Positions 3,234 to 62,188 of a DNA stretch of 64,000 bases are shown one piece after another (within the stretch, counting starts at the first letter, position 1; every line of letters starts with the position of its first letter). Origin of the DNA: Isurus oxyrinchus (taxonomy: Eukaryota). Below the pieces are notes generated by a model. The model made no database searches. It saw nothing but the letters and a program-made list of their open reading frames with translations, and was not told the DNA's origin. The stretch lies in contig JANJGN010000121.1 of the NCBI GenBank assembly GCA_026770705.1, positions 1,054,001-1,118,000 of the forward strand, read 5' to 3'. Made by a program: the position numbers and the translations under genes.

Positions 3234-3315
3234 AGTTTGAGAGTCAGAAGCTAAAGGAATATCTGGGAGTGGACAATAATTGGGAAATATTACTGCCTCC
3301 TGTCACTTCTCCAAG
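3234..3315 (+). pseudogene. Gene A leader (signal peptide) exon, apparent start codon reads ATA
   Basis: Acceptor ctttctctttcag ending 3233, donor G|GTAAT at 3316; 3276-3315 reads (I)IGKYYCLLSLLQ + phase 1, joining in frame to VGLSQEW; same SLLQ ending as gene C leader; in-frame TAA at 3252. Confidence 0.75.
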
Positions 3316-4180
3316 GTAATATCATCGTCAGCTCAGACAGATTTATGGTTAATAGTCTTCGTAAAAGATCATTCTTATTGAGCTGTGATTCGGAACCAAT
3401 TCAGCAGTGACCCAGTGCACAAACTCACACCAACTCCCATTCACCCATCACCCCTGTGCTCCCTGATATACACTGACTCCCTGTCTGACAGCAGAATTGG
3501 GGGAGTGCAGAGATCACAGAGGGTTGTAGGTTTGAGTAGGTTACAGACACAGGGAGTGGAGCGGAGTGATGGAGGAATTGGAAATCAAGTGTGATAAATA
3601 ATCACATCGAGGTGTTGTTGGACTGGGAGCCAGTGTAGGTCAGCGAGTGACTTGTGGGGTCGGGGTGGGTGTGTGCGGAGGTGAAAGCTTGAGTGGAAAA
3701 TTGGACACAAAATTCAGGGGATGAAGTCTATCTTGTGGCTAGCACTCTGACAGCAATGGCCTGAAATTAGTGTCTTTTGCTGATTTTAGTCAGAATTTCC
3801 CATGAAGACAACACAGCAGCTCCTAGAATAGACAGGCTGTTCAGTGTCACACTTCCTGTCCATTCTCACCATGCTAGATACTTCAATAAGGGAGCAAGAT
3901 AACTGAAAGAGAGAAGGAAGGTAAAGCTGTCCGTGTGTAAAGGTGTCAATATTCAGTTTGTATATTTGTCTTTCTCTCGACACATGCAGAGCTCAGGCTA
4001 GAGGCACTGTGTTAGTGTGTTTCACAGTGTCTGCTGGAGTAGGGTCAGTGCTGAGCTTGGGGACAAGTCAGTCTACAATGCTGCATCGGAATCAACAATA
4101 CAACAATATGGGGTTTGGATCAGAAATAATCCCTTAGACAATGAGGATCCAGGGTTAAATATTGATATTTCTCTCCACAG

Positions 4181-4549
4181 TTGGACTGTCACAAGAGTGG
4201 AAAGGTGAAACTCCACGAGAGGTGACAGCGCAGGAAGGTTCGTGTGTACAGATTCCATGTCATTACAGTTATCCATCGTGTCTGGAAAACCAACAACGAG
4301 GTGGAGTCTGGTTTAATAATGAGGAACAGATTCCCTGGGCTCCCATTGCCTTTCACTCCAAGGATCACAGTCACGAGTTACCACGGTTCCACCATCGGAC
4401 CCGGCTGTCTGGAGACCTGAAAGATGGCGACTGTTCCCTGATTATAAACAACATCAGACGGGAAGATGCAGGACCTTATTATTTCAGAATAGAATTTGAC
4501 AATGGTCCGAGCCATAACTATTACCCTGTAACCCAGCTTCACATTTCTG
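4181..4549 (+). CDS. Gene A exon: Siglec V-set Ig domain with the essential Arg
   Basis: 369-bp phase 1-1 exon (ctctccacag| ... G|GTAAGT); CVQIPC, GDCSL, EDAGPYYFRIE motifs give the Siglec Cys pattern and F-strand Arg. Confidence 0.95.
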
Positions 4550-5863
4550 GTAAGTGCTGTGTTATAATTACTCAACAATTCACATTCAACACTCAATGGG
4601 AAATAACACAAACTGTGACGTTTACATATTAACACAAAATACAGTTTATTATAACAGACTGTCTGATTCTCAATAACCTGGTGATAGCTTCCAGTTCAGT
4701 CCTAAAGCAACCTCTAATACTCACTTTAATATCAATGATTAAATGTATTGACTGTGTCCATCAATGTTATCAGGTTATCCACTCCCATTAGTCTCCCTAA
4801 TGCTTTTTAAATGTCTAACAATATGACAAACGAAGGATGTGCATTCCTATAGCGCCTTACACCACCTCAGCAAACTTCAAATCACTTCACAGACAATGAA
4901 GAAATTCTTGAAGTATAGTCACTGTCTAACGTGGCAGTGAGTTTGTGCACAGGAAGATCCCATAGAGAGCAATGGGATCAGTGACCCAGATCTCTGAGAG
5001 AATGATGAGCCAGGGTTCCATGAGCTGTGGACTGCTCCATCACCCACACCCCAGTGTTGGCAATTCAAGGGTCTGGGAGTGAAAGTGTATTCAGCTCAGT
5101 GACACATTCCCCACCAAGTTTGAAAATAGGAAAGTTGCTGCTGATTGTTGTGACCTCTCAGTTCCCATCTCATCCTTGGAAACCTGCTTTCAAAATACAA
5201 AACCAAGTCTCGCATTTCCATAGCGCCTTTCACCACCTCAGGACGATCCTAAATCGATTCACAGCCAATGAAGTGATTCTTGAAGCACACATTCTCCCCA
5301 CTCTCTGGTTAAAGAAGTTTCTCCTGAATTCCCCATTGGATTTATTAGTGAGGATCTTATATTGTCAGCCTCTGGTTTTGTTCATTGTGAGGAGTGGAAA
5401 CACTCTCTCCATGTCTACTCGATCAAAACCTTTCACTACTTCAAAGGTCAAATGAGGCCACCCCTCAACCTTCTCTGTTCAAGAGAACAGAGACCCAGCC
5501 TGTACATCCTCTCCTGATAGGTAAAGCCTCACATTGCTGAGATCATCTTGTGAAGCTTTTTACCACCCTCTCCAGTGTCTCCATATCCTTTTCCAAATGC
5601 TGAGTCTGTTCTCCCCGAGCTGTGAGCTGTTCCTCCACCCTCACCCAGTCTGGTCAAATCAAGGGTCACTGAGTGAGCGTGTATTAATCTGAGTGACAGA
5701 GATTCAACAAGTGTAAAAATAGACAATTCTTTAATGATCATTGTAACCTCTCAGTTCTGATATCATCCTTGTAAAAGTGCTTTCTCGTGTGGGACTGTGG
5801 TTTCTATTTGAACTGATGCTTCACGTTATATTTCTCTAAAAGGATCCATTCTCTGTGTGTTAG

Positions 5864-6160
5864 ATTTCACAGATAAACCCACGATATTCCCTGCTGAAAT
5901 TATTGCAGGAAAGCGTGTGGATGTAAGCTGCACCTTCAACACAACGTGCAATGGAACAGCAGCACCTGTCTTAACCTGGGACACTCCCACTGACGTACCT
6001 GGATCAGTCTCAAACACTGTAACTCAGCATGGTGTCACTCTGACCTATACTTCTGTTCTGACCCTGATCCCATCACTCAAACACCACGGACACACTCTCA
6101 GCTGCAGAGTGAGATATCCATCTGTTTCATCGGAGCGGACCCTCGTACTGACTGTGCTAT
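5864..6160 (+). CDS. Gene A exon: Siglec domain 2 (C2-set)
   Basis: 297-bp phase 1-1 exon; DFTDKP, CTFNTTC (inter-domain Cys), PVLTW, HHGHTLSCRV. Confidence 0.95.
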
Positions 6161-6329
6161 GTAAGTACAAACACCCTTCAATCTACATTAGTTGGAATAG
6201 TATCAAATGTGCACAGCAAGCTCCCACATACTGCACTTTGTTTATAAACAAACCATTGGTATTTAACTGGTAAAAAGTGACCCCTGACAGGCAGTACATC
6301 CTTACTACTGACTCTCCGACAGTGCATCA

Positions 6330-8060
6330 TGGACTCATAGACTCATAGACACTTACAGGACAGAAGGAGGCCATTTAGCCCATCATGTCCATGCTGGTCA
6401 GCAACTCCCTCCCCAAGTGCATCACCTCACATTTTTCCAGGTTGAATTCCATTTGCATCGTGATCATTTCCCCTTTATATAAGTCCAATTCATTTATATA
6501 CACCACAAACAGCAAGTGCCCCAGCACTTTGCCCTGTGGAACCCCACTGGAAACAGACATCCAGTCACAGAAACATCCCTCCACCATCACCCTCTGCTTC
6601 CTGCCTCAGCCAATATTGGATCCAACGTGCCACTTTGCCTTGGATCCCATGGGCTCTTACTTTCTTGGCCTCTCTGCCAAGAGGCACCTGATCAAAAGCC
6701 TTCCTCAGCCCATGTCGACCACATCAAAGGCATTACTCTCATCAACACTCCTGGTTACCTCCTCAAAAGATTTGATCAGGTTTGTCAAACATGACCTTCC
6801 CTTAACAAATCCATGCTGAATATCCCAGATTAATCCTTGTCTCTCCCAGTGCAGATTCATTCTGTCCTTCAGAATTCTTACTAGTAACTTCCCCACCACC
6901 GAGGTTAGACTGACTGGCCTGTAATTTCCTGATCTATCCCTTCCTCCCTTTTTTAATAATGGGACAACATTAGCCATCCTCCAGTCCTCTGGCACCTCAC
7001 CTGTGGCCAGAGAGGATTTGAAAATTACTGCCAGGGCCCCTGATATCTCTTCCCTTTCCTCCTTCAACAGTTTTGGATTCATCTCATCTGGGCTTGTGGA
7101 TTTATCCACTTTTCAGGCCACTAAACCCACTAGTACCTCCTCTCTCTGTGTTAATTTCCTCTCATATTTCACTGCCCTCCACCCTGATGTTATACCTGCA
7201 TCATCCTTTTCCATTGTGAAGACTGATGCAAAGTATTCATTGAGGACTGTACCCACGTCTTCCAGGTCCACACACACATTACCTCGATGGTCCCTAATCA
7301 GCCCCACTCTTTCCCGAGTTATTCTCCGGCTCTTTACATATTTAAAAAACCCCTCTGGGTTTTGCTTTATTCTACTCACCAGTGCTTTCTCATGCACTCT
7401 CTTATCTTTCCTAATGTCCTTTTTCAGTTCCCCTCTGCACTATTTATACTCCTCTAGGGACTCTGCTGTATTGAGCCCTCAGTATCTGCCATCAGCTTCT
7501 CTTTTTTCTCAATCCTAACCTTTATGTTCCTTGTCTTCCAGGGTTCTCCAGACTTGGTCTCCCTCTTTGTCTTTACAGGAAGATATCTGCTCTGTACTCT
7601 CGCTATTCCCTCCTTGAATGCCTCCCACTGCTCTGACACAGTTTTATCTGCAAAGAGCTTCTCCCAGTCCACTTGGGCCCAATCATATCTCATCTTAGTA
7701 AAATTAGCCTTTCCCCAGTTTAGAATTTTTATTCCCAGCACAAACTTATCCTTCTCCATAACTGTCCTAAATCCAATTGAGTTACAGTCACTATCTCCCC
7801 TACTGATACGCTTTCCAACTTCCCCGGCGCTTTTCCATATATTAGGTCCAGAACTGTCCCCTCCCTTGTTGAGCTTTCTATGCACAGGCTAAAAATCTTC
7901 TCCTGGATGCAACTTCAGAATTTTTCTCCCTCCCTACCTTGCTCACTAAAGCTGTCCCAGTTAATATTTGGGTAGTTAAAATCCCTGAGTATTACTGCTT
8001 TATTATTCTTACACATCTCTGAAATGTGATCACATGTTGGATTGTCCATCTCTCCCTGAC
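6330..8060 (-). mobile_element. CR1-type LINE fragment (ORF2 remnants) in gene A intron
   Basis: ORF 6705..7109 (PEDWRMANVVPL, NYRPVSLTSV, QHGFVKGRSCLTNL) and 6375..6590 (SGVPQG..YINEL). Confidence 0.9.
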
Positions 8061-8350: not shown

Positions 8351-8617
8351 TCTTAGCTGATGCTCGCTATCAATAACCAAGAGAGACCGACATTAGAACA
8401 AGCTGATTATTTATTGTAACAGAGGGCAGAGCACTAAATCCTTGCCTGCTCCCACAGCCACCTCCAGCTCTAGACTTACAGTTAACCAGTGGCCCACACT
8501 GTCCAGTGATTGGTCAGTACTGTCACATGGTTTATCCACTTGTATTCTCTTAAAGGTACCTGGCACTCCACATTATCACAGGAGGCCTATAGTACACACA
8601 TAACAGCGTGTTTGCCT

Positions 8618-9120
8618 CCTCAGCACTGACCCTTCTACAGTGCAGCACTCCCTCATTACTGACTCTCTAATAGTGTAATGATCCCTCAGTAGTGCTCCTC
8701 CAACATTGCACTGGTCAATCAGAACTGACGCTCTGACTGTGCAGTTTTACCTCAGCAGTAACCCTCCTACAGTGCAGGGCTCCCACAGTACTGTCCCTCC
8801 TACAGTGCAGCGCTCCCACAGTACTGTCCCTCCTACAGTGCAGCACTCCCTGTCCCTCCTACAGTGCAGCACTCCCTCAGAAGCGAACATTTGACAGTGC
8901 AGCACTCCTTCAGTAATGACCCTCCAACAGTGCAGATCTCCCTCACTACTGACCCTCCGACAGTGCAGCATCCCCTCAGGACTGACCCTCTGACAGTGCA
9001 GCACTCCCTCAGTACTGAACCTCTGGCAGTGCCACACTCCCTCAGTACTGACACACTGACAGTGCAGCACTCCCTCAGTACTGACCCTCTGACAGTGCAG
9101 CACGCCCTCAATACTGAACT
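8618..9120 (+). repeat. 33-bp minisatellite array
   Basis: Tandem units; source of spurious TVQHSLSTDP-type ORFs. Confidence 0.9.
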
Positions 9121-9249
9121 GAAGTGTCTGCCTGGATTACGGGCTATGTGGTGAAAGAACGTACATTGACATCACACCTTTCACATTCTCAGTGTCTTTC
9201 AAAGTGCTTCACAGTCAGTGTAAGTTAACTGATCTGTATTTGTTTTTAG

Positions 9250-9531
9250 ACGCACCACGGAATCTCTCAATTTCTTCTCCAGATATGATTAACGCTTCAT
9301 CGATCAATATAATTGAGGGGAATTCTGCAGTGATAATCTGCTCTGTCGAGAGCTCCCCAGCTTCTAACCTGACGTGGCGACATCTTAATGTCCCAATGAA
9401 CAGAACAAGTTCCAACAATGAGCTGTGGTTGGTGATTCCTCACGTTACATCCAGGGACACTGGAGAATATCAGTGTGTGGCAGAGAATGAACATGGAGCA
9501 GTGGAGGGGTTCATAACCATCACTGTGGAAT
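9250..9531 (+). CDS. Gene A exon: third Ig domain (C2/I-type)
   Basis: 282-bp phase 1-1 exon; YAPRNL, CSVESSPASNLTW, DTGEYQCVAEN. Confidence 0.93.
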
Positions 9532-11237: not shown

Positions 11238-11377
11238 ACAGTGGAGGAGAGATTCTGCACGTGATCCTGATCCTGGGAATACGAGCTGTGATATTCCTTG
11301 TGGCTGTGGTTATCACTATTGCTGGAGTCTGTGTCTGGGAGAGACAAACAGTGAAAGGAAGTCGACAGACTGTTTGA
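11238..11377 (+). CDS. Gene A exon: transmembrane helix with Arg plus short tail (activating-type)
   Basis: Acceptor ttctctag ending 11237; in phase it reads YSGGEILHVILILGIRAVIFLVAVVITIAGVCVWERQTVKGSRQTV*; Arg CGA 11282-11284, TGA 11375-11377; this frame is not in the ORF track. Confidence 0.85.
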
Positions 11378-11499
11378 AGCTTTGTACAGCAACAATCTGG
11401 TCAGTCAGTGCGGACAAATAACGTGTGATGTTGGGTTAAGTTGTAATGAAATTGGTCAGTGTCCTGGTTAGAATCACCTTCGTATCAGAGAGGCATTCC

Positions 11500-12095: not shown

Positions 12096-12314
12096 AAAAG
12101 CTTATTCTTTCCATCAGCACAAACAGCAATTTCCAAGCGGACTCCCATCAGCAGACAGAGTGCAATGAAACATCGGCATGCCTGCTTCTTAATGTACGGA
12201 GAGAAACCTGGAACGAGAGATTCTCCTTCTTCTCCTCAGCAAGCTGAAACTTTTCCTTATACCTGGTGCTCCCCAGTCCTGCTGTGTGGACACATCATAA
12301 CCACGGCATTGTCT

Positions 12315-12460
12315 GGCTGTGTGCAGCCAACATGGTCGAATAGGAATGAACAGAAATGTGACGTTGCTAAACTCTGTTCTCTGATTGGAATGTGCTTTCT
12401 GAATGCTGCACCTTTTTCATGCTGCGATAGATTGTAAGAAGCATTTGGCTTATGAATAAA
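12315..12460 (+). terminator. Gene A 3' UTR segment with AATAAA (12455-12460)
   Basis: Homologous to the sequence just after the distal stop of gene B (38045-38190, minus strand). Confidence 0.7.
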
Positions 12461-12802
12461 ATTACTTTGATTAACTCAAGTGATTAAAATGCTCAGCCTG
12501 TTCTGTAGATATTTAAAGATTAAAATTCTTATTTTGCTGCAAAATTCTTGGCTCAAAGACATTACTTCATGTTGTCACGTTTTCCAATCAGATGAATTCC
12601 TCTGTCCATCTTTATAATAGAAATTTCCAATGTAAACATGTCACATTGTAGCTGCACACACTTGCCAGCGGCTGGTGTGATATCAAAGCTGTCTTGCTGT
12701 CGAGAAACAGCGAGAAATATTCCTGTTGTGTGCATGAACTTCATGTTAGCATGAGACACAGGCATCAGATGCAATTTTGTGCAATTTGTACAATGTTCTT
12801 TA

Positions 12803-39923: not shown

Positions 39924-40005
39924 CTGGTGCTTCACAGAGAGTGAACTGGGGGTCAATGCAATGTCACTGGTCCCTGAAACTCTCTCCTCCATCGCTGTCT
40001 TTCTC
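39924..40005 (-). CDS. Gene B distal juxtamembrane cytoplasmic exon
   Basis: 82-bp phase 2-0 exon RKTAMEERVSGTSDIALTPSSLSVKHQ; splice sites intact. Confidence 0.85.
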
Positions 40006-41152: not shown

Positions 41153-41401
41153 TCAGTTATGCTCAAACCTGATCTGTGCGTATTCCGTCTCCTCTTCCCT
41201 GTGGACAGACCCATCACCACTGGACACCCTCAAAACTTGGGGATTGGCGTAGAGAAACTCTTCAGGTTTGCCAGGGTTCCCATGTCCAACATCGCCTCCC
41301 ACTGGACCTTCAGAGAGACCCCGGGGAGCTGGGGTCTCCCCCTCGCTAGTTGTGTCTCTGGTTGTGTTCCGGGCCTCAGTAATCAGCACGTTCTGTTTAC
41401 C
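41153..41401 (-). CDS. Gene B proximal terminal exon: degenerate ITIM (FLYANP) plus ITSM (TEYAQI)
   Basis: 249 bp, phase 0; GKQNV...EEFLYANPQV...EETEYAQIRFEHN*; AATAAA on minus strand at 40628-40623. Confidence 0.9.
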   Translation of the reverse strand, partial: GKQNVLITEARNTTRDTTSEGETPAPRGLSEGPVGGDVGHGNPGKPEEFLYANPQVLRVSSGDGSVHREEETEYAQIRFEHN

Positions 41402-42518: not shown

Positions 42519-42600
42519 CTGGTGTTTCACAGAGAGTGGACTGGGGGTCAATGCAATGTCTCTGGTCCCTGAAACTCTCTCCTCCATCGCTGTCTTTCTC
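42519..42600 (-). CDS. Gene B proximal juxtamembrane cytoplasmic exon
   Basis: 82-bp phase 2-0 exon RKTAMEERVSGTRDIALTPSPLSVKHQ. Confidence 0.9.
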
Positions 42601-43323: not shown

Positions 43324-43420
43324 TTTCTCACACAGATGAAGATGAAGATTCCAGCCAGGAAAACACTCAACATGATCCCAGCCGTGAACAATCCTACTGT
43401 CCATTTACTGGAGTCTCTAC
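43324..43420 (-). CDS. Gene B transmembrane exon (uncharged helix)
   Basis: 97-bp phase 1-2 exon GRDSSKWTVGLFTAGIMLSVFLAGIFIFICVR(K); tttttacag acceptor, GTAAGT donor; too short for the ORF track. Confidence 0.92.
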
Positions 43421-44341: not shown

Positions 44342-44635
44342 CTTTGACCCACAGATACTCCTTGAACATGGCTTCCCCGTGTGGGTTTTGAACCGAGCAG
44401 GATGCCATCACTCCCCCCTCATCCTGGGGTCTCATCAGGGTGAGGGAACCAGTCACCAGATGCCCATCTCTGACCTGCCACGACACAAAACCTCCGTGTG
44501 TTTGGTTACCACTGATGTTGGCACTGGGCAGGTGCCAGGTGAGGTCTCCGGGTGGGTTGGAGTTGGCCACACAGATGCAGGTGACCCCCTCTGACCTCCG
44601 AGTGCACTCCGACTGCTGGGAAATCTCCGGCTTAT
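44342..44635 (-). CDS. Gene B membrane-proximal Ig exon (MAG domain-5 / CD33-related type)
   Basis: 294-bp phase 1-1 exon; YKPEISQQSECTRRSEGVTCICVANSNPP..CSVQNPHG, with the C-x8-C-x-C pattern. Confidence 0.92.
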
Positions 44636-45369: not shown

Positions 45370-45645
45370 ATTGTACGTTCAGGTGGGTGATGTTGGAGGT
45401 GCTGTTACCCACTGGGTTCCTCGCTGTGCAGTAGAAACCTGCATCATTCTCCCGTGTTACAGGAGTGAAGGAGAGAGTGCGGCTACTTGTGTTTAACTGG
45501 GTGCTGGTGTTCCCCTCGATCCTGAACCAGGTGTAATGAGATATCGGTGGGACACTTTCACTGGAGCAGGTTAATGTGATATTGCTTCCCTCTCTTATCC
45601 CACCTGAGGATCTGCTGATGGACACCATCGTCTCCTGTGGGGGAT
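45370..45645 (-). CDS. Gene B Ig exon (CD22/sialoadhesin-like C2)
   Basis: 276-bp phase 1-1 exon; YPPQET..EGSNITLTCSSESVPP..YTWF..FYCTARNPVG. Confidence 0.93.
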
Positions 45646-47515: not shown

Positions 47516-47797
47516 ATTCCACAGTGATGGTTATGAACCCCTCCACTGCTCCATGTTCATTCTCTGCCACACACTGATAGTCTCCAGTGTCCCTGGATGT
47601 AACGTGAGGAATCACCAACCACAGCTCATTGTTGGAACTTGTTCTGTTCATTGGGACATTAAGATGTCGCCACGTCAGGTTAGAAGCTGGGAAGCTCTCG
47701 ACAGAGCAGATTATCACTGCAGAATTCCCCTCAATTATATTGATCGATGAAGCGTTAATCATATCAAGAGAAGTAATTGATGGGTTCCGTGGTGCAT
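47516..47797 (-). CDS. Gene B Ig exon (second copy of the domain-3 type)
   Basis: 282-bp phase 1-1 exon, near-identical to 9250-9531 and 48702-48983. Confidence 0.93.
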
Positions 47798-48679: not shown

Positions 48680-48701
48680 GTTGAAGTTTGCATTAACTCA
48701 C

Positions 48702-48983
48702 ATTCCACAGTGATGGTTATGAATCCCTCCACTGCTCCATGTTCATTCTCTGCCACACACAGATAGTCTCCAGTGTCCCTGGATGTAACGTGAGGAATCA
48801 CCAACCACAGCTCATTGTTGGAACTTGTTCTGTTCATTGGGACATTAAGATGTTGCCACGTCAGGTTAGAAGCTGGGAAGCTCTCGACAGAGCAGATTAT
48901 CACTGCAGAATTCCCCTCAATTATATTGATCGATGAAGCGTTAATCATATCAAGAGAAGTAAATGAGAGATTCTGTGGAGCAT
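48702..48983 (-). CDS. Gene B Ig exon (first copy of the domain-3 type)
   Basis: 282-bp phase 1-1 exon; APQNLSFTS..DTGDYLCVAEN. Confidence 0.93.
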
Positions 48984-49394: not shown

Positions 49395-49885
49395 NNNNNN
49401 NNNNNNNNNNNNNNNNNNNNNNNNNNNNNNNNNNNNNNNNNNNNNNNNNNNNNNNNNNNNNNNNNNNNNNNNNNNNNNNNNNNNNNNNNNNNNNNNNNNN
49501 NNNNNNNNNNNNNNNNNNNNNNNNNNNNNNNNNNNNNNNNNNNNNNNNNNNNNNNNNNNNNNNNNNNNNNNNNNNNNNNNNNNNNNNNNNNNNNNNNNNN
49601 NNNNNNNNNNNNNNNNNNNNNNNNNNNNNNNNNNNNNNNNNNNNNNNNNNNNNNNNNNNNNNNNNNTGTGTGTTGTCTGTGTGCGCGTGTGCATGTGNNN
49701 NNNNNNNNNNNNNNNNNNNNNNNNNNNNNNNNNNNNNNNNNNNNNNNNNNNNNNNNNNNNNNNNNNNNNNNNNNNNNNNNNNNNNNNNNNNNNNNNNNNN
49801 NNNNNNNNNNNNNNNNNNNNNNNNNNNNNNNNNNNNNNNNNNNNNNNNNNNNNNNNNNNNNNNNNNNNNNNNNNNNNNNNNNNNN
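49395..49885. other. Assembly gaps (49395-49666, 49698-49885)
   Basis: N runs within TG-rich intron sequence. Confidence 1.
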
Positions 49886-49979
49886 CATGTGTGTGTGTGT
49901 CTGTTGGTGCGTGTGTGGTCTGTGTTACCTGTAAACCTAACCCTTCCACACTGATGGTCACGAACACCCCCCACTGCCA

Positions 49980-50990: not shown

Positions 50991-51099
50991 TAGCTCACTG
51001 GAGGAGGGGAGTCCACAAATATCCCCATCCTCAATGAAGGGGGAGCCCAGCACATCAGGGCAAAAGATAAGGCTGAAGCATTTGCTACAACAATTATCC

Positions 51100-53524: not shown

Positions 53525-53821
53525 CTTGTACAGTTAGTACAAGGGTCCGCTCCGATGAAACAGATGGATATCTCACTCTGCAGCAGAGAGTGTGTCCGTG
53601 GTGTTTGAGTGATGGGATCAGGGTCAGAACAGAAGTATAGGTCAGAGTGACACCATGCTGAGTTACAGTGTTTGAGACTGATCCAGGTACGTCAGTGGGA
53701 GTGTCCCAGGTTAAGACAGGTGCTGCTGTTCCATTGCACGTTGTGTTGAAGGTGCAGCTTACATCCACACGCTTTCCTGCAATAATTTCAGCAGGGAATA
53801 TCATGGGTTTATCTGTGAAAT
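53525..53821 (-). CDS. Gene B Siglec domain-2 (C2-set) exon
   Basis: 297-bp phase 1-1 exon; differs from 5864-6160 at three residues (T/M, S/C, terminal L/Q). Confidence 0.95.
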
Positions 53822-54633
53822 CTAACACACAGAGAATGGATCCTTTTAGAGAAATATAACGTGAAGCATCAGTTCAAATAGAAATCACAGTCCCACAAGA
53901 GAAAGCACTTTTACAAGGATGATATCAGAACTGAGAGATTACAATGATCAGGAGAGAATTTCCTATTTTCAGACTTAGTGGAGTTTCTGTCACTCAGATG
54001 AATTCACTTCCACTTTGAGACAATTGAATTGACAATCCCGGGTGAGGGTGGGGGATCAGCTCACAGTTCCTGACACACTGGCTTGTTACTTTCTCCGAAA
54101 TCTGCCAGATTTAAATTCTATCCAGTTCCCAGCAGGAGAGAATCCATTTGAACCAATCACTGAACCGGCATTTAAAGCAGACGATCAGGTTATTGATCAC
54201 ATTGCTGTTTCTGGGAGCTTCCTGTGCACAAATTGGCTGCTGTGTTTCCCAGATTACAACAAGGGCTACATTTCAAGAATTATTTCAATGGTTGTGAATC
54301 CATTTGCGACGTCCAGAGGTGGTGAAAGGTGCTATAGAAATGCAAATCTTTCTTTTGTTGATATGTAAAAGTTTTAAACAGGATTAGGGAGATTGATGTA
54401 AGTGGATAACCTGATAACATTGATGGACACAGTCAATACATTTAATCATTGATATTAAAGTGGTATTAGAGGTTGTTTTAGGACTGAACTGGAAGCTATT
54501 AGCAGGTTATTGAGAATCAGACAGTGTGTTATAATAAGCTGTGTTTTGTGTTAATATGTAAACGTCACAGTTTGTGTTATTTCCCATTGAGTGTTGGATG
54601 TGAATTGTTGAGTAATTATAACACAGCACTTAC

Positions 54634-55002
54634 CAGAAACGTGAAGCTGGGTAACAGGGTAATAGTTATGGCTCGGACCATTGTCAAATTCTATTCTGAA
54701 AAAATAAGGTCCTTCATCTTCCCGTCTGATGTTGTTTATAATCAGGGAACAGTCGCCATCTTTCAGGTCTCCAGACAGCCGGGTCCGATGGTGGAACCGT
54801 GGTAACTCGTGACTGTGATCCTTGGAGTGAAAGGCAATGGGAGCCCAGGGAATCTGTTTCTCATTATTAAACCAGACTCCACCTCGCGGTTGGTTTTCCA
54901 GACACGATGGATAACTGTAATGACATGGAATCTGTACACACGAACCTTCCTGCGCTGTCACCTCTCGTGGACTGTCACCTTTCCACTCTTGTGAGGGTTT
55001 AT
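54634..55002 (-). CDS. Gene B V-set exon, innermost (V1), Arg present
   Basis: 369-bp phase 1-1 exon DKPSQEW..YFFRIEF..LHVS. Confidence 0.95.
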
Positions 55003-56949
55003 CTGGGGAGAGAAATCTCAATATTTAACTCTGGATGGTTTGTGGATCCACTAGACTCAAAATTTACAGATGAGGCTGAATTGGGGGGATGGTCAATACT
55101 GAGGAGAATGGCAACAAATTATTTTGGCAGGAAGAATAGAAAAACAGGATATTATTTAAATGGAGACAGGCTGCAGAATGCAGTACAGAGGGATCTGGGT
55201 GTCCTTGTACATGAATCACAGAAAGTCAGCATTCAGGATCACCACGGAATGAGGAAGGCAAGTGGAATGTTGGCCTTTATTGCAAAGGGATGGAGTCTAA
55301 AAGGAGGGAAGTCTTGCAACAGCTGCACAGGGTGAGATTGTATCAGGAGCAGTGTGTACAGTTCTGGTCTCCTTACTTATGGAGGGATAGAGTTGCATTG
55401 AAGGCAGTTCAGAGAAGCTTCACTGGGCTGATACCTGGGATTAAAGGGTTTGTCCTGTGAGGAAATGTTGAGCAGGTTGGGCCTGTATCCATTGGAGTTT
55501 AGAAGAATGAGGGGTGACCTTATTGAAACATATCCGATTCCGAGGGGGCTTGACAGGGTGGATACTGGGAGGATGTTTCCCCCTCGTGGGGGAATCTAGA
55601 ACCAGGGAGCACAGTTTCGGAATGAGGGCTCTCCCATTTAAGACTGAGATGAGGAGGAATTTCCTCTCTCAGAGGGGCGCTAGCCTGTGGAATTCTCTTC
55701 CCAGTGGAGGCTGGGCCATTGAATAGACTCAAGGCTGAGTGAGGCAGGTTTTTGATCGACAAGGGAGTCAAGGGTTTGGGGGACAGGCAGGAAAATGGAG
55801 TTAAGGCCACAACCAGATCAGTGAGAGCAGGCTCGAGGGGCCGAATGGCCTGCTCCTGTCCCTATTTCTTATGTTCCTACATTCTTACCTTCTTAAAATA
55901 TTAAAGCTGCAGAATAAACATGCAAGTGACTGACCCGCTCGACCCACCTTCCATCAGGGGCTGGAGGAGGTTACACAGATAGGGAGGTTTGTGGGGGCTG
56001 GAGGAGGTAACAGAGATAGGGAGGGCTGTAGATGCTGGAGGAGGTTACGCAGATAGGGAGGGTGGTAGGACCTGGAGGAGGTTGCAGAGATAGGGAGGGC
56101 TGTAGGGATTTGAGGAGTTTATGGAGATGGGGAGCGCGTAGGGACTGGAGGAGGCTGCAAGGGCAGAGAGGGTTTTAGGGGCAGGAGGAGTTTACAGGGA
56201 TAGGAAGAGTTGTAGGGGCTGGACGGATTGCAGAGGTAGGGAGGGTTGGAAAGGCTGGTGGAGGTTTCAGAGGTAGGGAAGGTTGCAGGGACTGGAGGAT
56301 TTACAGAGATGGGGGAGTTTTTGGGGCAGGATGGGGTTACAGAGATAGGGAGGGTTGTAAGGGCAGGACGAGGTTACATAGATATGGAGTGTGGCTGGGG
56401 CTGAGGGAGGCTACAGAGTTAGGGAGGGTTATAATGGCTGGAGGAGGTTACAGAGATAAAGGAAACTCTTAGGGACTGGAGGAGGTTACAGAGATAGGGA
56501 GGGTTGTAGTGGGCTGGAGGAGGTTACAGAAATATGAAGGGTTGTAAGAGATGGACCAGCTTACAGAGATAGGGAGAGGTATTCGGTCTGGAGGAGGTTG
56601 CAGAGATAGGGGAGGTTGTTAGGACTGGAGGAGGCTACATATATCGCGAGGGTTATCGGGGCTTGAGGAGGTTAAAGAGATAGGGAGGGGTGTTGGGTCC
56701 GGAGGAGTTTGCAGTGATAGGAATGGTTTTCGGGATTGGAAGAGAGTACTGAGATAGGAGGGTTGTAGGGACTGGAGGAGTCTCCTGAGATAGGGAGGGT
56801 TGTAGGGACTGGAGGAGGCTCCTGAGATAGGGAGGGTTGTAGGGACTGGAGGAGGCTCCTGAGATAGAGAGGGTTGTAGGGACTGGAGGAGGCTCCTGAG
56901 ATAGGGAATGTTGCCGTGGATGAAGATAAAGGAGGAGATTACTGTAATA

Positions 56950-57950
56950 GGGAGGAAAAATATTCAAAAATTTGGACATTGAGACTTTGCTTGACCAGGA
57001 GCCAGTCTCGGTCATCGAGCAGAGCGGGTGATAAGGGAACGGGACTTGGTGTGAGTAAGGACGTGGTCAGCAGTTTTGGATGGCCTCAAGTTTATGGAGT
57101 GTAGAGCATGTGTTGGAACAGTCGAGTCTGGAGGTAATGAAGGCGTGGATGAGGGTTTCAGCAGCAGATGAGCTGAGACAGGGTGAAGTCGTACGACGTT
57201 ATGGAGGTGGAAATAGACGGTGTTAGTGAGGGCGCAGATATGAGGCCGGAAGCTCATCTCAGGATCAAATGGGACAACAAAGCTGTGAACAGATTGGCTT
57301 CAATCTCAGAGAGCTGCCAGGGAGAGGAATGGAGTTGGTAGCGAGGGAACAGAGTTTGGAGCGGGGAATGAAGACAATGGCTTCAGTCTTTCCAATATTT
57401 AATTGGAGGGAATTTCTGCCCATCCAGTACTGGATGTCGGATAAGCAGCCTGATAATTTAGCAGCAGTGGAGGAGTCGAGAGAGGTGGTGGTGAGGTAGA
57501 GCTGGGGATCCTCAGTGGACAGGTGAAAGCTAACACTGTTCAGATGATGCTGCAAAGCCATTGCAAGTGATTCTCTGGCTACGATGAGATGGATAAGAAT
57601 GGAGCCAGGGGAGAGCAGTCCCACCCAGCTGGACGACAGTGGACAGGTGTTGGAGGAGGATGGTGTGGTCGAGCGTGTCAAAGGCTGCAGACAGATCGAG
57701 AAGGAGGAGGAGGGAAAGTTGACCTTTGTCACAGTCACACAGGATGCCATTTGTGACCTTGATAAGAGCTGTTTCAGCACAGTGGCTGGGGTGGGAACCT
57801 GATTGGAGGGATTCAAACATGGAGTTCCGGGAAAGATGGAACCGGATTCGGGAGATGGAAACACGTTCAAGGACTTTGGAGGGGAAAGAGAGGCTGGAGA
57901 TGGGACGGGGGTTTACACGGACAGTGTGAGGGGTGGAAGGTGTAGTGGGG
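56950..57950 (-). mobile_element. L2-type LINE RT fragment (duplicate at ~60610-61580)
   Basis: ETALIKVTN..LLLLLDLSAAFDTLDH; LQLNIGKTEAI. Confidence 0.9.
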
Positions 57951-58184
57951 AGGAGACACTTCACTCAGGGGGGAGGTGTCATCACCCCTCAGCTCGGTTT
58001 ACGTTACAGCTATGATGTGGATTCAATCACACACAATAAGCTCATGGATCTGGGAGCAGAAATAGACAAATCATTAAAAATAGTGACGCTGGTTAACACG
58101 GCCAAAAAACAAGCAAATCAAACACTATTATTTCCCATTGAGTGTTGAATGTGAATTGTTGAGTAATTATAACACAGCACTTAC

Positions 58185-58553
58185 CAGAAACGTGAAGCTG
58201 GGTTACAGGGTAATAGTTATGTCTCGGACCATTGTCAAATTCTATCCTGAAAAAATAAGGTCCTGCATCTTCCCGTCTGATGTTGTTTATAATCAGGGAA
58301 CAGTCGCCATCTTTCAGGTCTCCAGACAGCCGGGTCCGATGGTGGAACCGTGGTAACTCGTGACTGTGATCCTTGGAGTGAAAGGCAATGGGAGCCCAGG
58401 GAATCTCTTTCTCATTATTAAACCAGACTCCACCTCGCGTTTGGTTTTCCAGACACGATGGATAACTGTAATGACATGGAATCTGTACACACGAACCTTC
58501 CTGCGCTGTCACCTCTCGTGGAGTGTCGCCTTTCCACTCTTGTGAGGGTTCAG
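58185..58553 (-). CDS. Gene B V-set exon, middle (V2), Arg present
   Basis: 369-bp phase 1-1 exon AEPSQEW..YFFRIEF..LHVS. Confidence 0.93.
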
Positions 58554-61500
58554 CTGGGGAGAGAAATATCAATATTTAACTCTGGATGGTTTGTGGATCC
58601 ACTAGACTCAAAATTTACTGATGAGGCTGAATTGGGGGGATGGTCAATACTGAGGAGAATGGCAACAAATTATTTTGGCAGGAAGAATAGAAAAACAGGA
58701 TATTATTTAAATGGAGACAGGATGCAGAATGCAGTACAGAGGGATCTGGGTGTCCTTGTACATGAATCACAGAAAGTCAGCATTCAGGAACACCACGGAA
58801 TGAGGAAGGCAAGTGGAATGTTGGCCTTTATTGCAAAGGGATGGAGTATAAAAGGAGGGAAGTCTTGCAACAGCTGCACAGGGTGAGATTGTATCAGGAG
58901 CAGTGTGTACAGTTCTGGTCTCCTTACTTATGGAGGGATAGAGTTGCATTGAACGCAGTCCAGAGGAGGTTCACTGGGCTGATTCCTGGGATTAAAGGGT
59001 TTGTCCTGTGAGTAAATGTTGAGCAGGTTGGGCCTGTATCCATTGGAGTTTAGAAGAATGAGGGGTGACCTTATTGAAACATATCCGATTCCGAGGGGGC
59101 TTGACAGGGTGGATACTGGGAGGATGTTTCCCCCTCGTGGGGGAATCTAGAACCAGGGAGCACAGTTTCGGAATGAGGGCTCTCCCATTTAAGACTGAGA
59201 TGAGGAGGAATTTCCTCTCTCAGAGGGGCGCTAGCCTGTGGAATTCTCTTCCCCAGAGAGCAGTGGAGGCTGGGCCATTGAATAGACTCAAGGCTGAGTG
59301 AGGCAGGTTTTTGATCGACAAGGGAGTCAAGGGTTTGGGGGACAGGCAGGAAAATGGAGTTAAGGCTACAACCAGATCAGTGAGGGGCCGAATGGCCTGC
59401 TCCTGTCCCTATTTCTTATGTTCCTACATTCTTACCATCTTAAAATATTAAAGCTGCAGAATAAACATGCAAGTGACTGACCCGCTCGACCCACCTTCCA
59501 TCAGGGGCTGGAGGAGGTTACACAGATAGGGAGGTTTGTGGGGGCTGGAGGAGGTAACAGAGATAGGGAGGGCTGTAGATGCTGGAGGAGGTTACGCAGA
59601 TAGGGAGGGTGGTAGGACCTGGAGGAGGTTGCAGAGATAGGGAGGGCTGTAGGGACTTGAGGAGTTTATGGAGATGGGGAGCGTGTAGGGACTGGAGGAG
59701 GCTGCAAGAGCAGAGAGGGTTTTAGGGGCAGGAGGAGTTTACAGGGATAGGAAGAGTTGTAGGGGCTGGACGGATTGCAGAGGTAGGGAGGGTTGGAAAG
59801 GCTGGTGGAGGTTTCAGAGGTAGGGAAGGTTGCAGGGACTGGAGGAGTTTACAGAGATGGGGGAGTTTTTGGGGCAGGATGGGGTTACAGAGATAGGGAG
59901 GGTTGTAGGGGCAGGACGAGGTTACATAGATATGGAGTGTGGCTGGGGCTGAGGGAGGCTACAGATAGGGAGGGTTATAATGGCTGGAGGAGGTTACAGA
60001 GATAATGGAAGCTTTTAAGGACTGGAGGAGGTTACAGAGATAGGGAGGGTTGTAGTGGGCTGGATGAGGTTACAGAAATATGAAGGGTTGTAAGAGATGG
60101 AGCAGCTTACAGAGATAGGGAGAGGTATTCGGTCTGGAGGAGGTTGCAGAGATAGGGGAGGTTGTTAGGACTCAAGGAGGCTACAAATATCGCGAGGGTT
60201 ATCGGGGCTTGAGGAGGTTAAAGAGATAGGGAGGGGTGTTGGGTCCGGAGGAGTTTGCAGTGATAGGAATGGTTTTCGGGATTGGAAGAAGGTACTGAGA
60301 TAGGAGGGTTGTAGAGACTGGAGGAGTCTCCTGAGATAGGGAAGGTTGTAGGGACTGGAGGAGGCTCCTGAGATAGGGAGGGTTGTAGGGACTGGAGGAG
60401 GCTCCTGAGATAGGGAGGGTTGTAGGGACTGGAAGAGGCTCCTGAGATAGGGAGGGTTGTAGGGACAGGAGGAGACTCCTGAGATAGGGAGGGTTGTAGG
60501 GACTGGAGGAGGCTCCTGAGATAGGGAGGGTTGTAGGGACAGGAGGAGACTCCTGAGATAGGGAATGTTGCCGTGGATGAAGGAAGAGGAGGAGATTACT
60601 GTAATAGGGAGGAAAAATATTCAAAAATTGTGACATTGAGACTTTGCTTGACCAGGAACCAGTCTCGGGACTTGGTGTGAGTAAGGACGTGGTCAGCAGT
60701 TTTGGATGGCCTCAAGTTTATGGAGTGTAGAGCGTGTGTTGGAACAGTCGAGTCTGGAGGTAATGAAGGCGTGGATGAGGGTTTCAGCAGCAGATGAGCT
60801 GAGACAGGGTGACGTCGTACAATGTTACGGAGGTGGAAATAGACGGTGTTAGTGAGGGCGCAGATATGAGGCCGGAAGCTCATCTCAGGATCAAATGGGA
60901 CAACAAAGCTGTGAACAGATTGGCTTCAATCTCAGAGAGCTGCCAGGGAGAGGAATGGAGTTGGTAGCGAGGGAACAGAGTTTGGAGCGGGGAATGAAGA
61001 CAATGGCTTCAGTCTTTCCAATATTTAATTGGAGGGAATTTCTGCCCATCCAGTACTGGATGTCGGATAAGCAGCCTGATAATTTAGCAGCAGTGGAGGA
61101 GTCGAGAGAGGTGGTGGTGAGGTAGAGCTGGGCATCCTCAGTGGACAGGTGAAAACTAAAACTGTTCAGATGATGCTGCAAAGCCATTGCAAGTGATTCT
61201 CTGGCTACGATGAGATGGATAAGAATGGAGCCAGGGGAGAGCAGTCCCACCCAGCTGGACGACAGTGGACAGGTGTTGGAGGAGGATGGTGTGGTCGAGC
61301 GTGTCAAAGGCTGCAGACAGATCGAGAAGGACGAGGAGGGAAAGTTGACCTTTGTCACAGTCACACAGGATGCCATTTGTGACCTTGATAGGAGCTGTTT
61401 CAGCACAGTGGCTGGGGTGGGAACCTGATTGGAGGGATTCAAACATGGAGATCCGGGAAAGATGGGAACGGATTCGGGAGATGGAAACACGTTCAAGGAC

Positions 61501-61810
61501 TTTGGAGAGGAAAGAGAGGCTGGAGATGGGACGGGGGTTTACACAGACAGTGTAAGGGGTGGAAGGTGTAGTGGGGAGGAGACACTTCACTCAGGGGGGA
61601 GGTGTCATCACCCCTCAGCTCGGTTTACATTACAGCTATGATGTGGATTCAATCACACACAATAAGCTCATGGATCTGGGAGCAGAAATAGACAAATCAT
61701 TAAAAATAGTGACGCTGGTTAACATGGCCAAAAAACAAGCAAATCAAACACTATTATTTCCCATTGAGTGTTGGATGTGAATTGTTGAGTAATTATAACA
61801 CAGCACTTAC

Positions 61811-62188
61811 CAGAAACCTGAAGCTGGGTTACAGGGTAATAGTTATGGCTCGGACGATTGCCAAATTTTATCGTGAAAAAATAAGGTCCTGCATCTTCCC
61901 GTCTGATGTTGTTTATAATCAGGGAACAGTCGCCATCTTTCAGGTCTCCAGACAGCCGGGTCCGATGGCGGAACCGTGGTAACTCGTGACTGTGATCCTT
62001 GGAGTGAAAGGCTGTAGACCATTTAGACCATTTGTTCCGTATGTAGCTTCTCATTTTCCAGATTCCGACATGTGGTTTCTTTACCAAATCTGATGGATAA
62101 CTGTAATGACATGGAATCTGTACACACGAACCTTTCTGCGCTGTCACCTCTCGTGGAGTGTCACCTTTCCACTCTTGTGACAATCCAA
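61811..62188 (-). CDS. Gene B V-set exon, outermost in window (V3), essential Arg replaced by Thr
   Basis: 378-bp phase 1-1 exon VGLSQEW..YFFTIKF..LQVS; ACG at 61874-61872. Confidence 0.93.

What the first reader, a model, noticed from the sequence alone, without database searches (positions are those of the whole stretch)
3234..62188. Paired activating/inhibitory Siglec receptors, convergently oriented, in a probable cartilaginous fish
Seen: genes A (+) and B (-) share near-identical V, C2 and third Ig exons (C2 differs at 3 of 99 residues) plus short stretches of flanking intron (4550-4790 vs 54400-54633; 5740-5863 vs 53822-53950). A ends in an Arg-containing TM and a Tyr-free tail; B ends in an uncharged TM with ITIM/ITSM tails. 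Known: this is the design of primate Siglec-5/14 and Siglec-11/16, where gene conversion keeps ligand-binding domains matched and the charged-TM partner signals through DAP12. Inference: an independently evolved paired-Siglec system, possibly countering pathogen sialic-acid mimicry. I cannot check whether it has been described.
Basis: partly seen in the sequence, partly recalled or inferred. Interest (0 to 1): 0.92.

Follow-up and report, generated by a model that had tools for sequence, protein, structure and literature searches.

The report
Shark Siglec pair, activating copy start-less

Summary
Gene A (+) and gene B (-) share V, C2 and third Ig exons at 96-98% nucleotide identity. A ends in an Arg-containing membrane span with a 14-residue Tyr-free tail. 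B has an uncharged span and ITIM/ITSM tails. A/B identity is mosaic: tracts of 97-99% end abruptly against 72-80% homologous intron, and their ends do not follow exon borders. That pattern points to gene conversion, not one uniform duplication.

Three points correct the reading. (1) A's leader exon reads ATA where relatives have the initiator ATG and has an in-frame TAA upstream, so this copy is probably a pseudogene or null allele. (2) B is much larger than described: three V exons, the first lacking the sialic-acid arginine, then C2, two Ig3, Ig4, Ig5 and two ITIM/ITSM tail cassettes. Its leader lies outside the window, and an assembly gap sits in one of its introns. (3) Great white and basking shark annotations hold many such genes, and activating and inhibitory ends are intermingled on the ectodomain tree.

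The pairing is therefore family-wide. This scan has already reported the same family elsewhere in this genome. I found no paper that describes it.

The parts
3255..3316 (+). Gene A leader-like exon. It reads RNIWEWTIIGKYYCLLSLLQ and ends at a phase-1 GT donor. It has ATA (3276-3278) where relatives have the initiator ATG, and an in-frame TAA at 3252-3254.
   Evidence: It is the only leader-like peptide in six frames of the window. There is no ATG on the + strand between 3064 and 3316. Great white shark proteins read (MRSGW)NIWERTMIGKSYFLLSLLQ.
4181..4549 (+). Gene A V-set exon with the Siglec motifs GSCVQIPC, DCSLII and YYFRIE.
   Evidence: Pfam V-set 2e-11 and Ig_CD22 2e-9. Matches Siglec-5 at 3e-14 with the Arg aligned. 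AG/GT borders, phase 1.
5864..6160 (+). Gene A C2-set exon.
   Evidence: Pfam C2-set_2 4.5e-9. Borders. 97.6% nt identity to B's C2 exon.
9250..9531 (+). Gene A third Ig exon (I-set/Ig_3). Whether A's transcript includes it is not shown.
   Evidence: Pfam hits, borders. Close great white shark activating models skip such an exon and join C2 directly to the Arg-TM exon.
11238..11398 (+). Gene A membrane exon with Arg in the span and a short Tyr-free tail. Stop codon TGA at 11375-11377.
   Evidence: Translation. 91-96% identical to the C-termini of 12 or more great white shark proteins. The same cassette occurs in Scyliorhinus and Chiloscyllium proteins.
12117..12540 (+). Untranslated last exon of gene A. 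The 3' end is approximate. 12315-12465 is 80% identical to the 3'UTR behind B's tail 2 (38034-38186).
   Evidence: A GT..AG joint 11398>12117 appears in run X3. Acceptor and AATAAA/ATTAAA signals at 12455, 12483 and 12519. blastn similarity to B's 3'UTR.
4147..4783 (+). High-identity tract 1 between A and B (B partner 55036-54401), 96-97% identical. It runs 234 nt past the V exon into the intron, then identity drops to 72%.
   Evidence: Fisher p = 9e-14.
5748..6143 (+). High-identity tract 2 between A and B, with 4 mismatches in 396 nt. It starts 116 nt before the C2 exon and ends 17 nt before the exon's 3' end.
   Evidence: Mismatch positions and Fisher tests (p = 3e-5 and 9e-11).
61811..62188 (-). 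Gene B first V exon (V1 type). It has Thr in place of the sialic-acid Arg (YFFTIKF) and lacks the extra Cys.
   Evidence: Pfam V-set 1e-10. It resembles the first V domains of great white shark P0155 and P0267.
58185..58553 (-). Gene B second V exon (V2 type, Arg kept).
   Evidence: It belongs to a 3.55-kb tandem unit that is 97-100% identical to the next unit along its whole length.
54634..55002 (-). Gene B third V exon (V2 type, Arg kept). This is the exon next to C2 and the partner of A's V exon.
53525..53821 (-). Gene B C2-set exon.
49395..49885 (.). Two N runs (49395-49666 and 49698-49885) in B's C2-to-Ig3a intron. They are the only link between B's 5' and 3' blocks. Not filled.
   Evidence: 49131-49394 is a 75% copy of 48308-48575, so an older Ig3 unit in or near the gap cannot be excluded.
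48702..48983 (-). Gene B Ig3a exon.
47516..47797 (-). Gene B Ig3b exon, a tandem copy with a 1186-nt period.
   Evidence: The intron just behind it is read in contigs of runs X1-X3 (loose end at 9539).
45370..45645 (-). Gene B Ig4 exon.
   Evidence: Pfam Ig_3 1.5e-12. Borders. Collinear with zebra shark P0016.
44342..44635 (-). Gene B Ig5 exon, next to the membrane.
   Evidence: Borders. 92% identical to great white shark P0155 residues 353-458.
43324..43420 (-). Gene B membrane exon, uncharged: RDSSKWTVGLFTAGIMLSVFLAGIFIFICVR(K).
   Evidence: Its first 28 nt are read joined to an Ig3 exon end in runs X2 and X3 (loose end at 9533).
42519..42600 (-). Gene B cytoplasmic mini-exon, copy 1 (RKTAMEERVSGTRDIALTPSPLSVKHQ).
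41153..41401 (-). Gene B tail exon 1, with FLYANP (degenerate ITIM), TEYAQI (ITSM) and a stop codon.
   Evidence: 74-80% identical to great white and basking shark tails.
39924..40005 (-). Cytoplasmic mini-exon, copy 2.
38212..38460 (-). Tail exon 2, with LLYANI (ITIM), TEYAQI (ITSM) and a stop codon.
   Evidence: 82-88% identical to P0003 and P0167. Great white shark model P0154 strings two such cassettes in one protein.

Best explanation
The window holds two tail-to-tail members, plus one exon remnant, of a large elasmobranch family of Siglec-type receptors.

Gene B is an inhibitory-type receptor. By sequence it runs V1 (Arg lost), V2, V2', C2, Ig3, Ig3, Ig4, Ig5, an uncharged membrane span, and a cytoplasmic part with one or two ITIM/ITSM cassettes. 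By analogy with mammalian Siglecs, those motifs would recruit SH2-domain phosphatases after sialoglycan binding (inferred).

Gene A is an activating-type copy. It runs leader, V2-type V, C2, perhaps Ig3, then a membrane span with a buried Arg and a 14-residue tail. Such a receptor would signal through a separate ITAM adaptor chain whose identity is unknown (inferred). In this assembly A's leader has ATA instead of the initiator ATG, with an in-frame stop upstream. This copy is therefore most likely a pseudogene or a null allele.

The near-identity of A's and B's V and C2 exons comes from recent sequence exchange among family members, by gene conversion or unequal recombination. It does not come from one uniform duplication, and not from selection on exons alone.

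The pairing of matched binding ends with opposite signalling ends is a property of the whole family. It is not a private link between these two genes.
For: - Siglec type: Pfam V-set/Ig_CD22 and C2-set_2. The best solved relatives are Siglec-5, MAG, Siglec-7, Siglec-8 and CD33, with the essential Arg aligned.
- Exon models: canonical AG/GT, phase-compatible and open. B is collinear with zebra shark P0016 and great white shark P0155. A is collinear with great white shark P0260, P0169 and P0180.
- Start loss in A. The leader shows 4 changes in 19 residues, against about 95% identity in the ectodomain exons.
- Mosaic identity with sharp ends that do not follow exon borders. By contrast, B's own V duplication is uniform at 97-100% over 3.55 kb.
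- Family-wide intermingling: the activating/inhibitory label needs at least 9 changes on the V+C2 tree (shuffled mean 11.6). B's nearest rows are activating proteins.
- Transcripts of both types exist in RNA-like contigs: C2 joined to the Arg-TM exon, Ig3 joined to B's membrane exon, and a 3'UTR intron 11398>12117.
- The scan's earlier follow-ups on this genome describe the same family.
Against: - The ATA could be a base error or one individual's allele. I could not lay reads on it.
- All of A's other exons are open, which a long-dead pseudogene would not usually keep. Conversion from live paralogs could explain that.
- A's introns are covered by contigs with 0-1 mismatches in RNA-like runs, so the locus may be transcribed.
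- Nonsynonymous to synonymous changes between A and B are 17:5, close to neutral, so constraint cannot be read from them.
- B's leader is not in the window, and its two halves are joined across an assembly gap.
- The runs used are only guessed to be RNA.
- No ligand, adaptor or phosphatase binding is shown.
Confidence: 0.6

Rival explanations
1. This is a working activating/inhibitory Siglec pair. A is translated, because the ATA is an assembly error, a polymorphism or a tolerated non-AUG start. It signals through an ITAM adaptor and counterbalances B on the same sialylated ligands.
For: - All A exons except the leader are intact with good splice sites.
- The same architecture (leader, V, C2, Arg-TM) is annotated as intact in great white shark (P0260, P0264).
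- The Arg-TM exon type is spliced in contigs.
- The V domains of A and B both keep the Arg.
Against: - No ATG lies in or near the leader, there is an in-frame TAA upstream, and the leader carries further non-conservative changes.
- A's private letters at 9467 and 11320 are never read in the contigs. Only the paralogs' letters are read there.
- A and B are not each other's nearest relatives.
Confidence: 0.25
2. This is a plain recent duplication. The exons are kept similar by purifying selection and the introns decayed, with no gene conversion.
For: Exons are more alike than most intron sequence. Many introns are filled with different transposon pieces.
Against: - The 97% tracts extend 234 nt and 116 nt into introns, and one ends inside the C2 exon.
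- The change to 72-80% is abrupt.
- Synonymous sites are as conserved as the rest, and replacement changes dominate at 17:5. That is not the signature of purifying selection on an old duplicate.
Confidence: 0.07
3. This is an assembly artefact. The repeated V, Ig3 and tail units, or the A/B juxtaposition itself, come from mis-joined or duplicated contigs of a multi-copy family.
For: - N runs lie between A and B and inside B.
- B's two V units are 97-100% identical over 3.55 kb.
- The family is highly repetitive: 466 contigs of one run were laid on 3.5 kb.
Against: - A, and each block of B, lie in gap-free sequence.
- Triple-V, double-Ig3 and double-tail architectures are all annotated independently in other sharks (P0001, P0168, P0154).
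- The copies differ by 1-4%, with indels.
Confidence: 0.08

Closest known systems
Human Siglec-5 / Siglec-14 and Siglec-11 / Siglec-16 paired receptors (PMC4042635; review PMC13358205)
   Same: - Linked genes with near-identical V and C2 domains.
- One gene carries ITIM plus an ITIM-like/ITSM tail. The other has a charged residue in the membrane span and a short tail.
- Identity is kept up by gene conversion.
- Null alleles of the activating partner are known in humans (own knowledge).
   Different: - Here the genes are tail to tail and about 25 kb apart.
- They are two of many similar genes, not an isolated pair.
- The inhibitory gene has three V domains and five further Ig domains.
- The activating copy lacks a start codon.
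- The adaptor is unknown, and no ligand data exist.
RefSeq gene models of great white shark (Carcharodon carcharias): activating XP_041037236.1 (P0260) and XP_041037231.1 (P0169); inhibitory XP_041037226.1 (P0155)
   Same: - 92-97% identity per exon.
- The same exon order, the same leader, and the same Arg-TM cassette (ILGIRAVIFLVAVVITIAGVCVWE) and ITIM/ITSM tails.
   Different: - None is encoded exactly by this window.
- The shark activating models join C2 directly to the Arg-TM exon, without Ig3.
- Their leaders start with ATG.
- These are automatic predictions named by similarity, not studied proteins.
Human Siglec-12 (Siglec-XII), with two V-set domains (own knowledge)
   Same: Tandem V-set domains ahead of C2, with the essential Arg lost in one V domain.
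   Different: B has three V exons, and the Arg-less one is the first. Any relation is by design only. Orthology was not tested.
Teleost Siglec repertoire (PMC7226832)
   Same: Both have Siglec-type V-set lectin domains and ITIM-bearing members.
   Different: That paper reports only Siglec-1, CD22, MAG and Siglec-15 in bony fish and states that fish genomes lack CD33-related Siglecs. The shark family here has the CD33-type tail layout and many members.

Membership tests
Siglec family (I-type lectins) | N-terminal V-set Ig domain most similar to Siglec V-sets | tested here: met
   Pfam V-set and Ig_CD22. The top 17 solved-structure matches are all Siglecs, at 3e-14 to 5e-11.
Siglec family (I-type lectins) | Conserved arginine of the F strand (Y-x-F-R) that binds the sialic acid carboxylate | tested here: met
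   A has YYFRIE. B's second and third V exons have YFFRIE, aligned to the Arg of Siglec-5. The feature is not met in B's first V exon, which has YFFTIKF.
Siglec family (I-type lectins) | Unusual cysteine pattern: C-x5-C in strand B, a Cys in strand E, and an extra Cys in the following C2 domain | tested here: met
   GSCVQIPC, DCSLII and VSCTFNTTCNG are present in both A and B. The disulfides themselves are not shown.
Siglec family (I-type lectins) | Binding of sialylated glycans | not testable with these tools
   This needs a glycan array or a cell-binding assay with the Arg mutated.
CD33-related Siglec subgroup | Grouping with mammalian CD33-related Siglecs rather than with MAG, CD22, Siglec-1 or Siglec-15 | tested here: inconclusive
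   Siglec-5 and MAG score equally (3.2e-14 and 3.3e-14). CD22 and Siglec-15 are far weaker. No tree with mammalian sequences was built.
CD33-related Siglec subgroup | Membrane-proximal ITIM followed by a distal ITIM-like/ITSM motif in the tail | tested here: met
   Tail 2 has LLYANI, then 19 intervening residues, then TEYAQI. In tail 1 the first motif is degenerate (FLYANP).
Paired activating/inhibitory receptors (Siglec-5/14 type) | Two linked genes with near-identical ligand-binding domains and opposite signalling modules | tested here: met
Paired activating/inhibitory receptors (Siglec-5/14 type) | Identity maintained by gene conversion (mosaic tracts) | tested here: met
   Sharp steps from 97% to 72% and from 80% to 98-99%, not at exon borders. 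The donor may be any family member.
Paired activating/inhibitory receptors (Siglec-5/14 type) | Both partners are intact, expressed genes | tested here: not met
   A's leader has ATA instead of ATG and an in-frame TAA upstream. A's own spliced form was not seen. B's leader lies outside the window.
Paired activating/inhibitory receptors (Siglec-5/14 type) | The two genes are each other's closest relatives in the binding domains | tested here: not met
   On the V+C2 tree, A's nearest rows are P0265 and P0263, and B's nearest are P0259 and P0262. All four are great white shark activating proteins. There is no starred clade of A with B.
Paired activating/inhibitory receptors (Siglec-5/14 type) | The charged membrane residue couples to an ITAM adaptor (DAP12, DAP10 or FcR gamma) | not testable with these tools
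   No shark adaptor sequence was on hand. A 2014 survey found no FcR gamma chain in shark data (PMC4016189).

The most novel reading that the evidence does not exclude
Sharks run a family-wide paired Siglec system that arose independently of the primate pairs. Ongoing gene conversion shuttles the same V/C2 binding module between a conserved Arg-TM activating cassette and ITIM/ITSM cassettes. Start-less copies such as A would then be segregating null alleles of the activating partner, like human SIGLEC14-null, or conversion donors, rather than dead relics.
Probability: 0.2. Interest if true: 0.65.

Novelty: new member of a known kind. Interest (0 to 1): 0.42.

Why it matters
The published view is that bony fish lack CD33-related Siglecs (PMC7226832). 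Paired Siglecs are discussed as a mammalian, mainly primate, answer to pathogens that mimic host sialic acids (PMC13358205).

A large shark family with the same design would push this strategy back to the oldest jawed vertebrates, or show that it was invented twice. Its features are matched binding ends, an Arg-TM end or an ITIM/ITSM end, and conversion tracts.

This window adds three things to the family picture:
- clear conversion-tract borders;
- a triple-V inhibitory gene with a double tail cassette;
- an activating copy that has lost its start codon.

As a single locus it is one more instance of something this scan has already reported, and public gene models already hint at it.

Tried and rejected
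- Leader for B: a six-frame scan for the family leader found only A's, and blastn-short found no copy. B's 5' end lies outside the window.
- Remnant ITIM tail in A's untranslated last exon: local alignment of 12100-12320 against both B tail exons scored no better than shuffles. Only 12315-12465 matches B's 3'UTR.
- More Arg-TM proteins: a search with the region of P0006 gave only 2 hits, because the word filter is too strict for 48 residues. The whole-protein search and the cluster look-ups served instead.
- Protein encoded exactly by the window: none was found among 282 fetched proteins, so no public gene model for A or B was recovered.
- Reads: all runs are contigs and only guessed to be RNA. 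A's 9531>11238 junction was not seen. Contigs cannot show absence.
- Papers: searches on Siglec with shark or cartilaginous fish, on paired receptors with DAP12 and shark, and on CD33-related Siglecs with fish found no description of this family.
- Complex prediction was not used, because no shark adaptor sequence was available. Structure prediction was not used, because the sequence match to solved Siglecs was decisive enough.
Exons were searched one by one, by reference.
- No N run was filled.

Full report
**Sequence and gaps.** The window has 46.6% G+C and a CpG observed/expected ratio of 0.31, so it is vertebrate DNA. It has five N runs. Three (32060-32320, 32614-32752, 33491-33989) lie in the roughly 25-kb spacer between the 3' ends of the two genes. 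Two (49395-49666, 49698-49885) lie in gene B's intron between the C2 exon (ends 53525) and the Ig3a exon (starts 48983), 412 nt from the nearest exon and inside TG-rich simple sequence. No reading frame crosses a gap.

Gene A lies wholly in gap-free sequence. B's 5' block (49886-64000) and 3' block (33990-49394) are connected only by the scaffold. The stretch just before the gap, 49131-49394, is a 75% copy of the intron behind Ig3a (48308-48575). An older Ig3 unit in or near the gap therefore cannot be excluded. I did not try to fill it.

**The observation.** Inverted repeats of 574 nt (96%), 545 nt (93%) and 335-380 nt (88-93%) link 4.1-9.6 kb to 47.5-55 kb. I set exon borders from AG/GT sites and reading phase.

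| Exon | A | B | nt differences | aa differences |
|---|---|---|---|---|
| V | 4181-4549 | 54634-55002 | 14/369 | 9/122 |
| C2 | 5864-6160 | 53525-53821 | 7/297 | 3/98 |
| Ig3 | 9250-9531 | 47516-47797 (Ig3b) | 9/282 | 5/93 |
| Ig3 | 9250-9531 | 48702-48983 (Ig3a) | 12/282 | 8/93 |

A's last coding exon (11238-11398) reads SGGEILHVILILGIRAVIFLVAVVITIAGVCVWERQTVKGSRQTV and then stops. It has an arginine in the span and no tyrosine in the tail. B's membrane exon (43324-43420) is uncharged. It is followed by a mini-exon and a tail exon carrying ITIM/ITSM motifs.

**Identity along the genes.** A global alignment of 3900-6500 against B's complement shows steps, not a slope:

- V exon: 96.2%.
- The next 231 nt of intron: 97.0%.
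- 4781-4970: 72.1% (Fisher p = 9e-14 against the previous stretch).
- After an indel-rich middle, 5600-5769: 80.1%.
- 5748-6143: only 4 mismatches in 396 nt.
- The last 17 nt of the C2 exon hold 5 mismatches, and the following intron is 74.7% identical (p = 9e-11).

The high-identity tracts therefore overrun one exon border by 234 nt, start 116 nt before another, and end inside an exon. That is what sequence exchange produces, and it is not what selection on coding sequence produces. Replacement changes outnumber silent ones 17 to 5 across the three exon pairs, so the exons are not old copies held together by purifying selection.

B's own two V units offer a contrast. They are 97-100% identical over the full 3.55 kb, which is a plain recent tandem duplication.

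**What the domains are.**

- The V exons hit Pfam V-set and Ig_CD22, and the second exon hits C2-set_2.
- Among solved structures, the 17 best matches to A's V exon are all Siglecs: Siglec-5 and MAG at 3e-14, then Siglec-7, Siglec-8, CD33, sialoadhesin and Siglec-10.
- In that alignment A's YYFRIE lies on Siglec-5's YFFRVE, so the essential arginine is in place.
- The Siglec cysteine pattern is present.
- B's tail 2 has LLYANI followed by TEYAQI. From my own knowledge, this is the proximal-ITIM, distal-ITSM layout of mammalian CD33-related Siglecs. Tail 1 has FLYANP, which is not a canonical ITIM, followed by TEYAQI.
- Whether the family is orthologous to the CD33-related group or to MAG cannot be decided from these scores.

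**Whose genes they are.** A search of 1.8 billion representative proteins with A's V exon gave 31 hits below 1e-30. All those I looked up by name are shark and ray proteins. NCBI's pipeline names them Siglec-5, -7, -8, -10, -12, -13 or -14, CD33-like or MAG-like. The closest are from great white shark and basking shark, at 93-97% per exon. None is encoded exactly by this window.

**Gene B is bigger than described.** Zebra shark P0016 and great white shark P0155 align collinearly to V, C2, Ig3a, Ig3b, Ig4 (45370-45645), Ig5 (44342-44635), the membrane exon, the mini-exon and the tail.

All have phase-1 borders, so they can be spliced in series. Proteins with two, three or four V domains are annotated in other sharks and rays (P0155, P0001, P0002).

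The first V exon is of the 'first position' type. It lacks the extra cysteine and has threonine where the sialic-acid arginine should be (YFFTIKF).

The mini-exon plus tail exon occurs twice, at 42519-42600 with 41153-41401 and at 39924-40005 with 38212-38460. A great white shark model (P0154) strings two such cassettes into one protein. The duplication is therefore not peculiar to this assembly, and the cassettes may be used alternatively or serially.

No leader exon for B exists in the window, so B is cut off by the window's end.

**Gene A lacks a start.** The only leader-like exon in the window is at 3255-3316. It ends with a phase-1 donor that fits the V exon. It reads RNIWEWT-I-IGKYYCLLSLLQ where great white shark proteins read NIWERT-M-IGKSYFLLSLLQ. 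The codon at 3276-3278 is ATA, an in-frame TAA sits at 3252-3254, and there is no ATG on this strand from 3064 to 3316. The alternative upstream ATG used in some shark models (MKYL...) is CTA here.

The leader has four changes in 19 residues, while the ectodomain exons are about 95% identical to relatives. One explanation that fits is a dead or null copy whose V and C2 exons were refreshed by conversion. All other exons of A are open.

The architecture leader, V (with the extra Cys), C2, Arg-TM is annotated as intact in great white shark (P0260, P0264). There C2 joins the Arg-TM exon directly. Ig3-to-Arg-TM joins are annotated in Scyliorhinus and Chiloscyllium (P0006, P0022).

**Reads.** One call was allowed, and I laid four runs on 9225-12725. 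All four are contigs and only guessed to be RNA. Summed exon depth exceeds the neighbouring intron by about a thousand-fold, and a GT..AG joint 11398>12117 is present, so RNA is likely. The contigs show the following:

- An Arg-TM exon preceded by the end of a C2 exon whose letters match neither A nor B. This is a paralog's C2-to-TM junction.
- An Ig3 exon end joined to 28 letters identical to B's membrane exon.
- Ig3-to-Ig3 and Ig3-to-Ig4 joins.
- Contigs with 0-1 mismatches over A's introns.
- At A's private positions 9467 and 11320, only the paralogs' letters.

Contigs drop rare variants, so this is no proof of absence. Both receptor types are therefore expressed in the family. A's own mature message is not shown.

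The joint also reveals an untranslated last exon for A-type genes (12117 to about 12540, with poly(A) signals at 12455-12519). Its stretch 12315-12465 is 80% identical to the 3'UTR behind B's tail 2. That hints at a common 3' end, but I found no trace of a decayed ITIM tail there.

**Pair or family?** I cut the V+C2 module out of 55 shark proteins, added A and B, and built a tree.

- The lamniform rows form one poorly resolved group at 93-97% identity.
- The label activating/inhibitory needs at least 9 changes, and at least 5 are forced by well-supported branches. Shuffled labels need 11.6 on average.
- B's nearest rows are great white shark activating proteins. A's nearest are other activating proteins.
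- The Arg-TM cassette is almost invariant and always has a 9-17 residue tail. It occurs in Carcharodon, two Scyliorhinus species and Chiloscyllium.

The matched-ends, opposite-tails design is thus a feature of the family, kept up by repeated exchange. A and B are two neighbours in it, not a dedicated couple. Earlier follow-ups of this scan reached the same family picture from windows about 0.7 Mb away and on other pieces of this genome.

**Mechanism (inferred).** B-type receptors would bind sialylated ligands through the Arg-bearing V domains and damp signalling through phosphatases recruited to the phosphorylated ITIM/ITSM. A-type receptors would bind the same ligands and activate through an ITAM adaptor held by the membrane arginine. 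Which adaptor is unknown. A 2014 survey found no FcR gamma chain in shark data (PMC4016189), and I had no shark adaptor sequence to test.

**Literature.** I found no paper describing shark Siglecs. The whale shark genome paper only lists Siglecs among gnathostome gene families (PMC8455134). A study of fish Siglecs states that fish genomes lack CD33-related Siglecs (PMC7226832). A 2025 review treats paired Siglecs through the primate examples (PMC13358205).

**Verdict.** This is one more locus of a shark Siglec-type family already seen by the scan and visible in public gene models. It has clear conversion tracts, an unusually elaborate inhibitory gene, and an activating copy that is probably not functional in this assembly.

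Noticed in passing
window 26518-26811 (-): A lone V-set exon remnant of a different Siglec-like subfamily. It is 89% identical to basking shark P0214 residues 14-111, a subfamily with YYFYVD and no Arg. The match stops where a gag-like retroelement ORF (25980-26552) begins. No other exons of that gene are in the window.
   Followed up: partly
window 49131-49394 and 48308-48575: The sequence abutting the N run at 49395 is a 75% copy of the intron behind the Ig3a exon. A third, older Ig3 unit may lie in or beside the assembly gap. It was not filled.
   Followed up: partly
window 61811-62188 (-): The first V exon of gene B has Thr in place of the sialic-acid-binding Arg and a rewritten C-C' region (PSDLVKKPHVGIWKMRSYIRNKWSKW). 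It is an Arg-less outer V domain, reminiscent of human Siglec-12.
   Followed up: partly
window 54577-61810: A 3.55-kb tandem unit (V exon, intron with reverse-transcriptase fragments, and a 37-bp minisatellite) is present twice at 97-100% identity along its whole length. This is either a very recent duplication or an assembly duplication.
   Followed up: partly
window 41153-41401 (-) tail exon 1: A possible internal donor (ATCAG|GTTTGA) lies just before the stop codon. It would let tail 1 splice on to the second mini-exon, as in great white shark model P0154, and would give a tail with four tyrosine motifs.
   Followed up: no
window 8564-9218, 12731-13359, 22081-22412, 29374-29802, 38540-38805, 41503-42036; also 22457-23606, 55901-57048, 59448-60705: 33-bp and 37-bp minisatellites recur in introns and spacers of the cluster, on both strands. 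One ends 32 nt before A's Ig3 exon.
   Followed up: no
window 599-1826, 6375-7885, 14681-15940, 25439-26552, 36237-36940, 50754-51101, 57265-57964, 60891-61590: Broken retroelement pieces with reverse transcriptase, gag-aspartyl protease and integrase fragments by Pfam.
   Followed up: partly
great white shark proteins P0260, P0264: Single-V activating models carry the extra Cys (PSCLENQ) directly behind the leader. This Cys is therefore not confined to V domains that follow another V domain.
   Followed up: no
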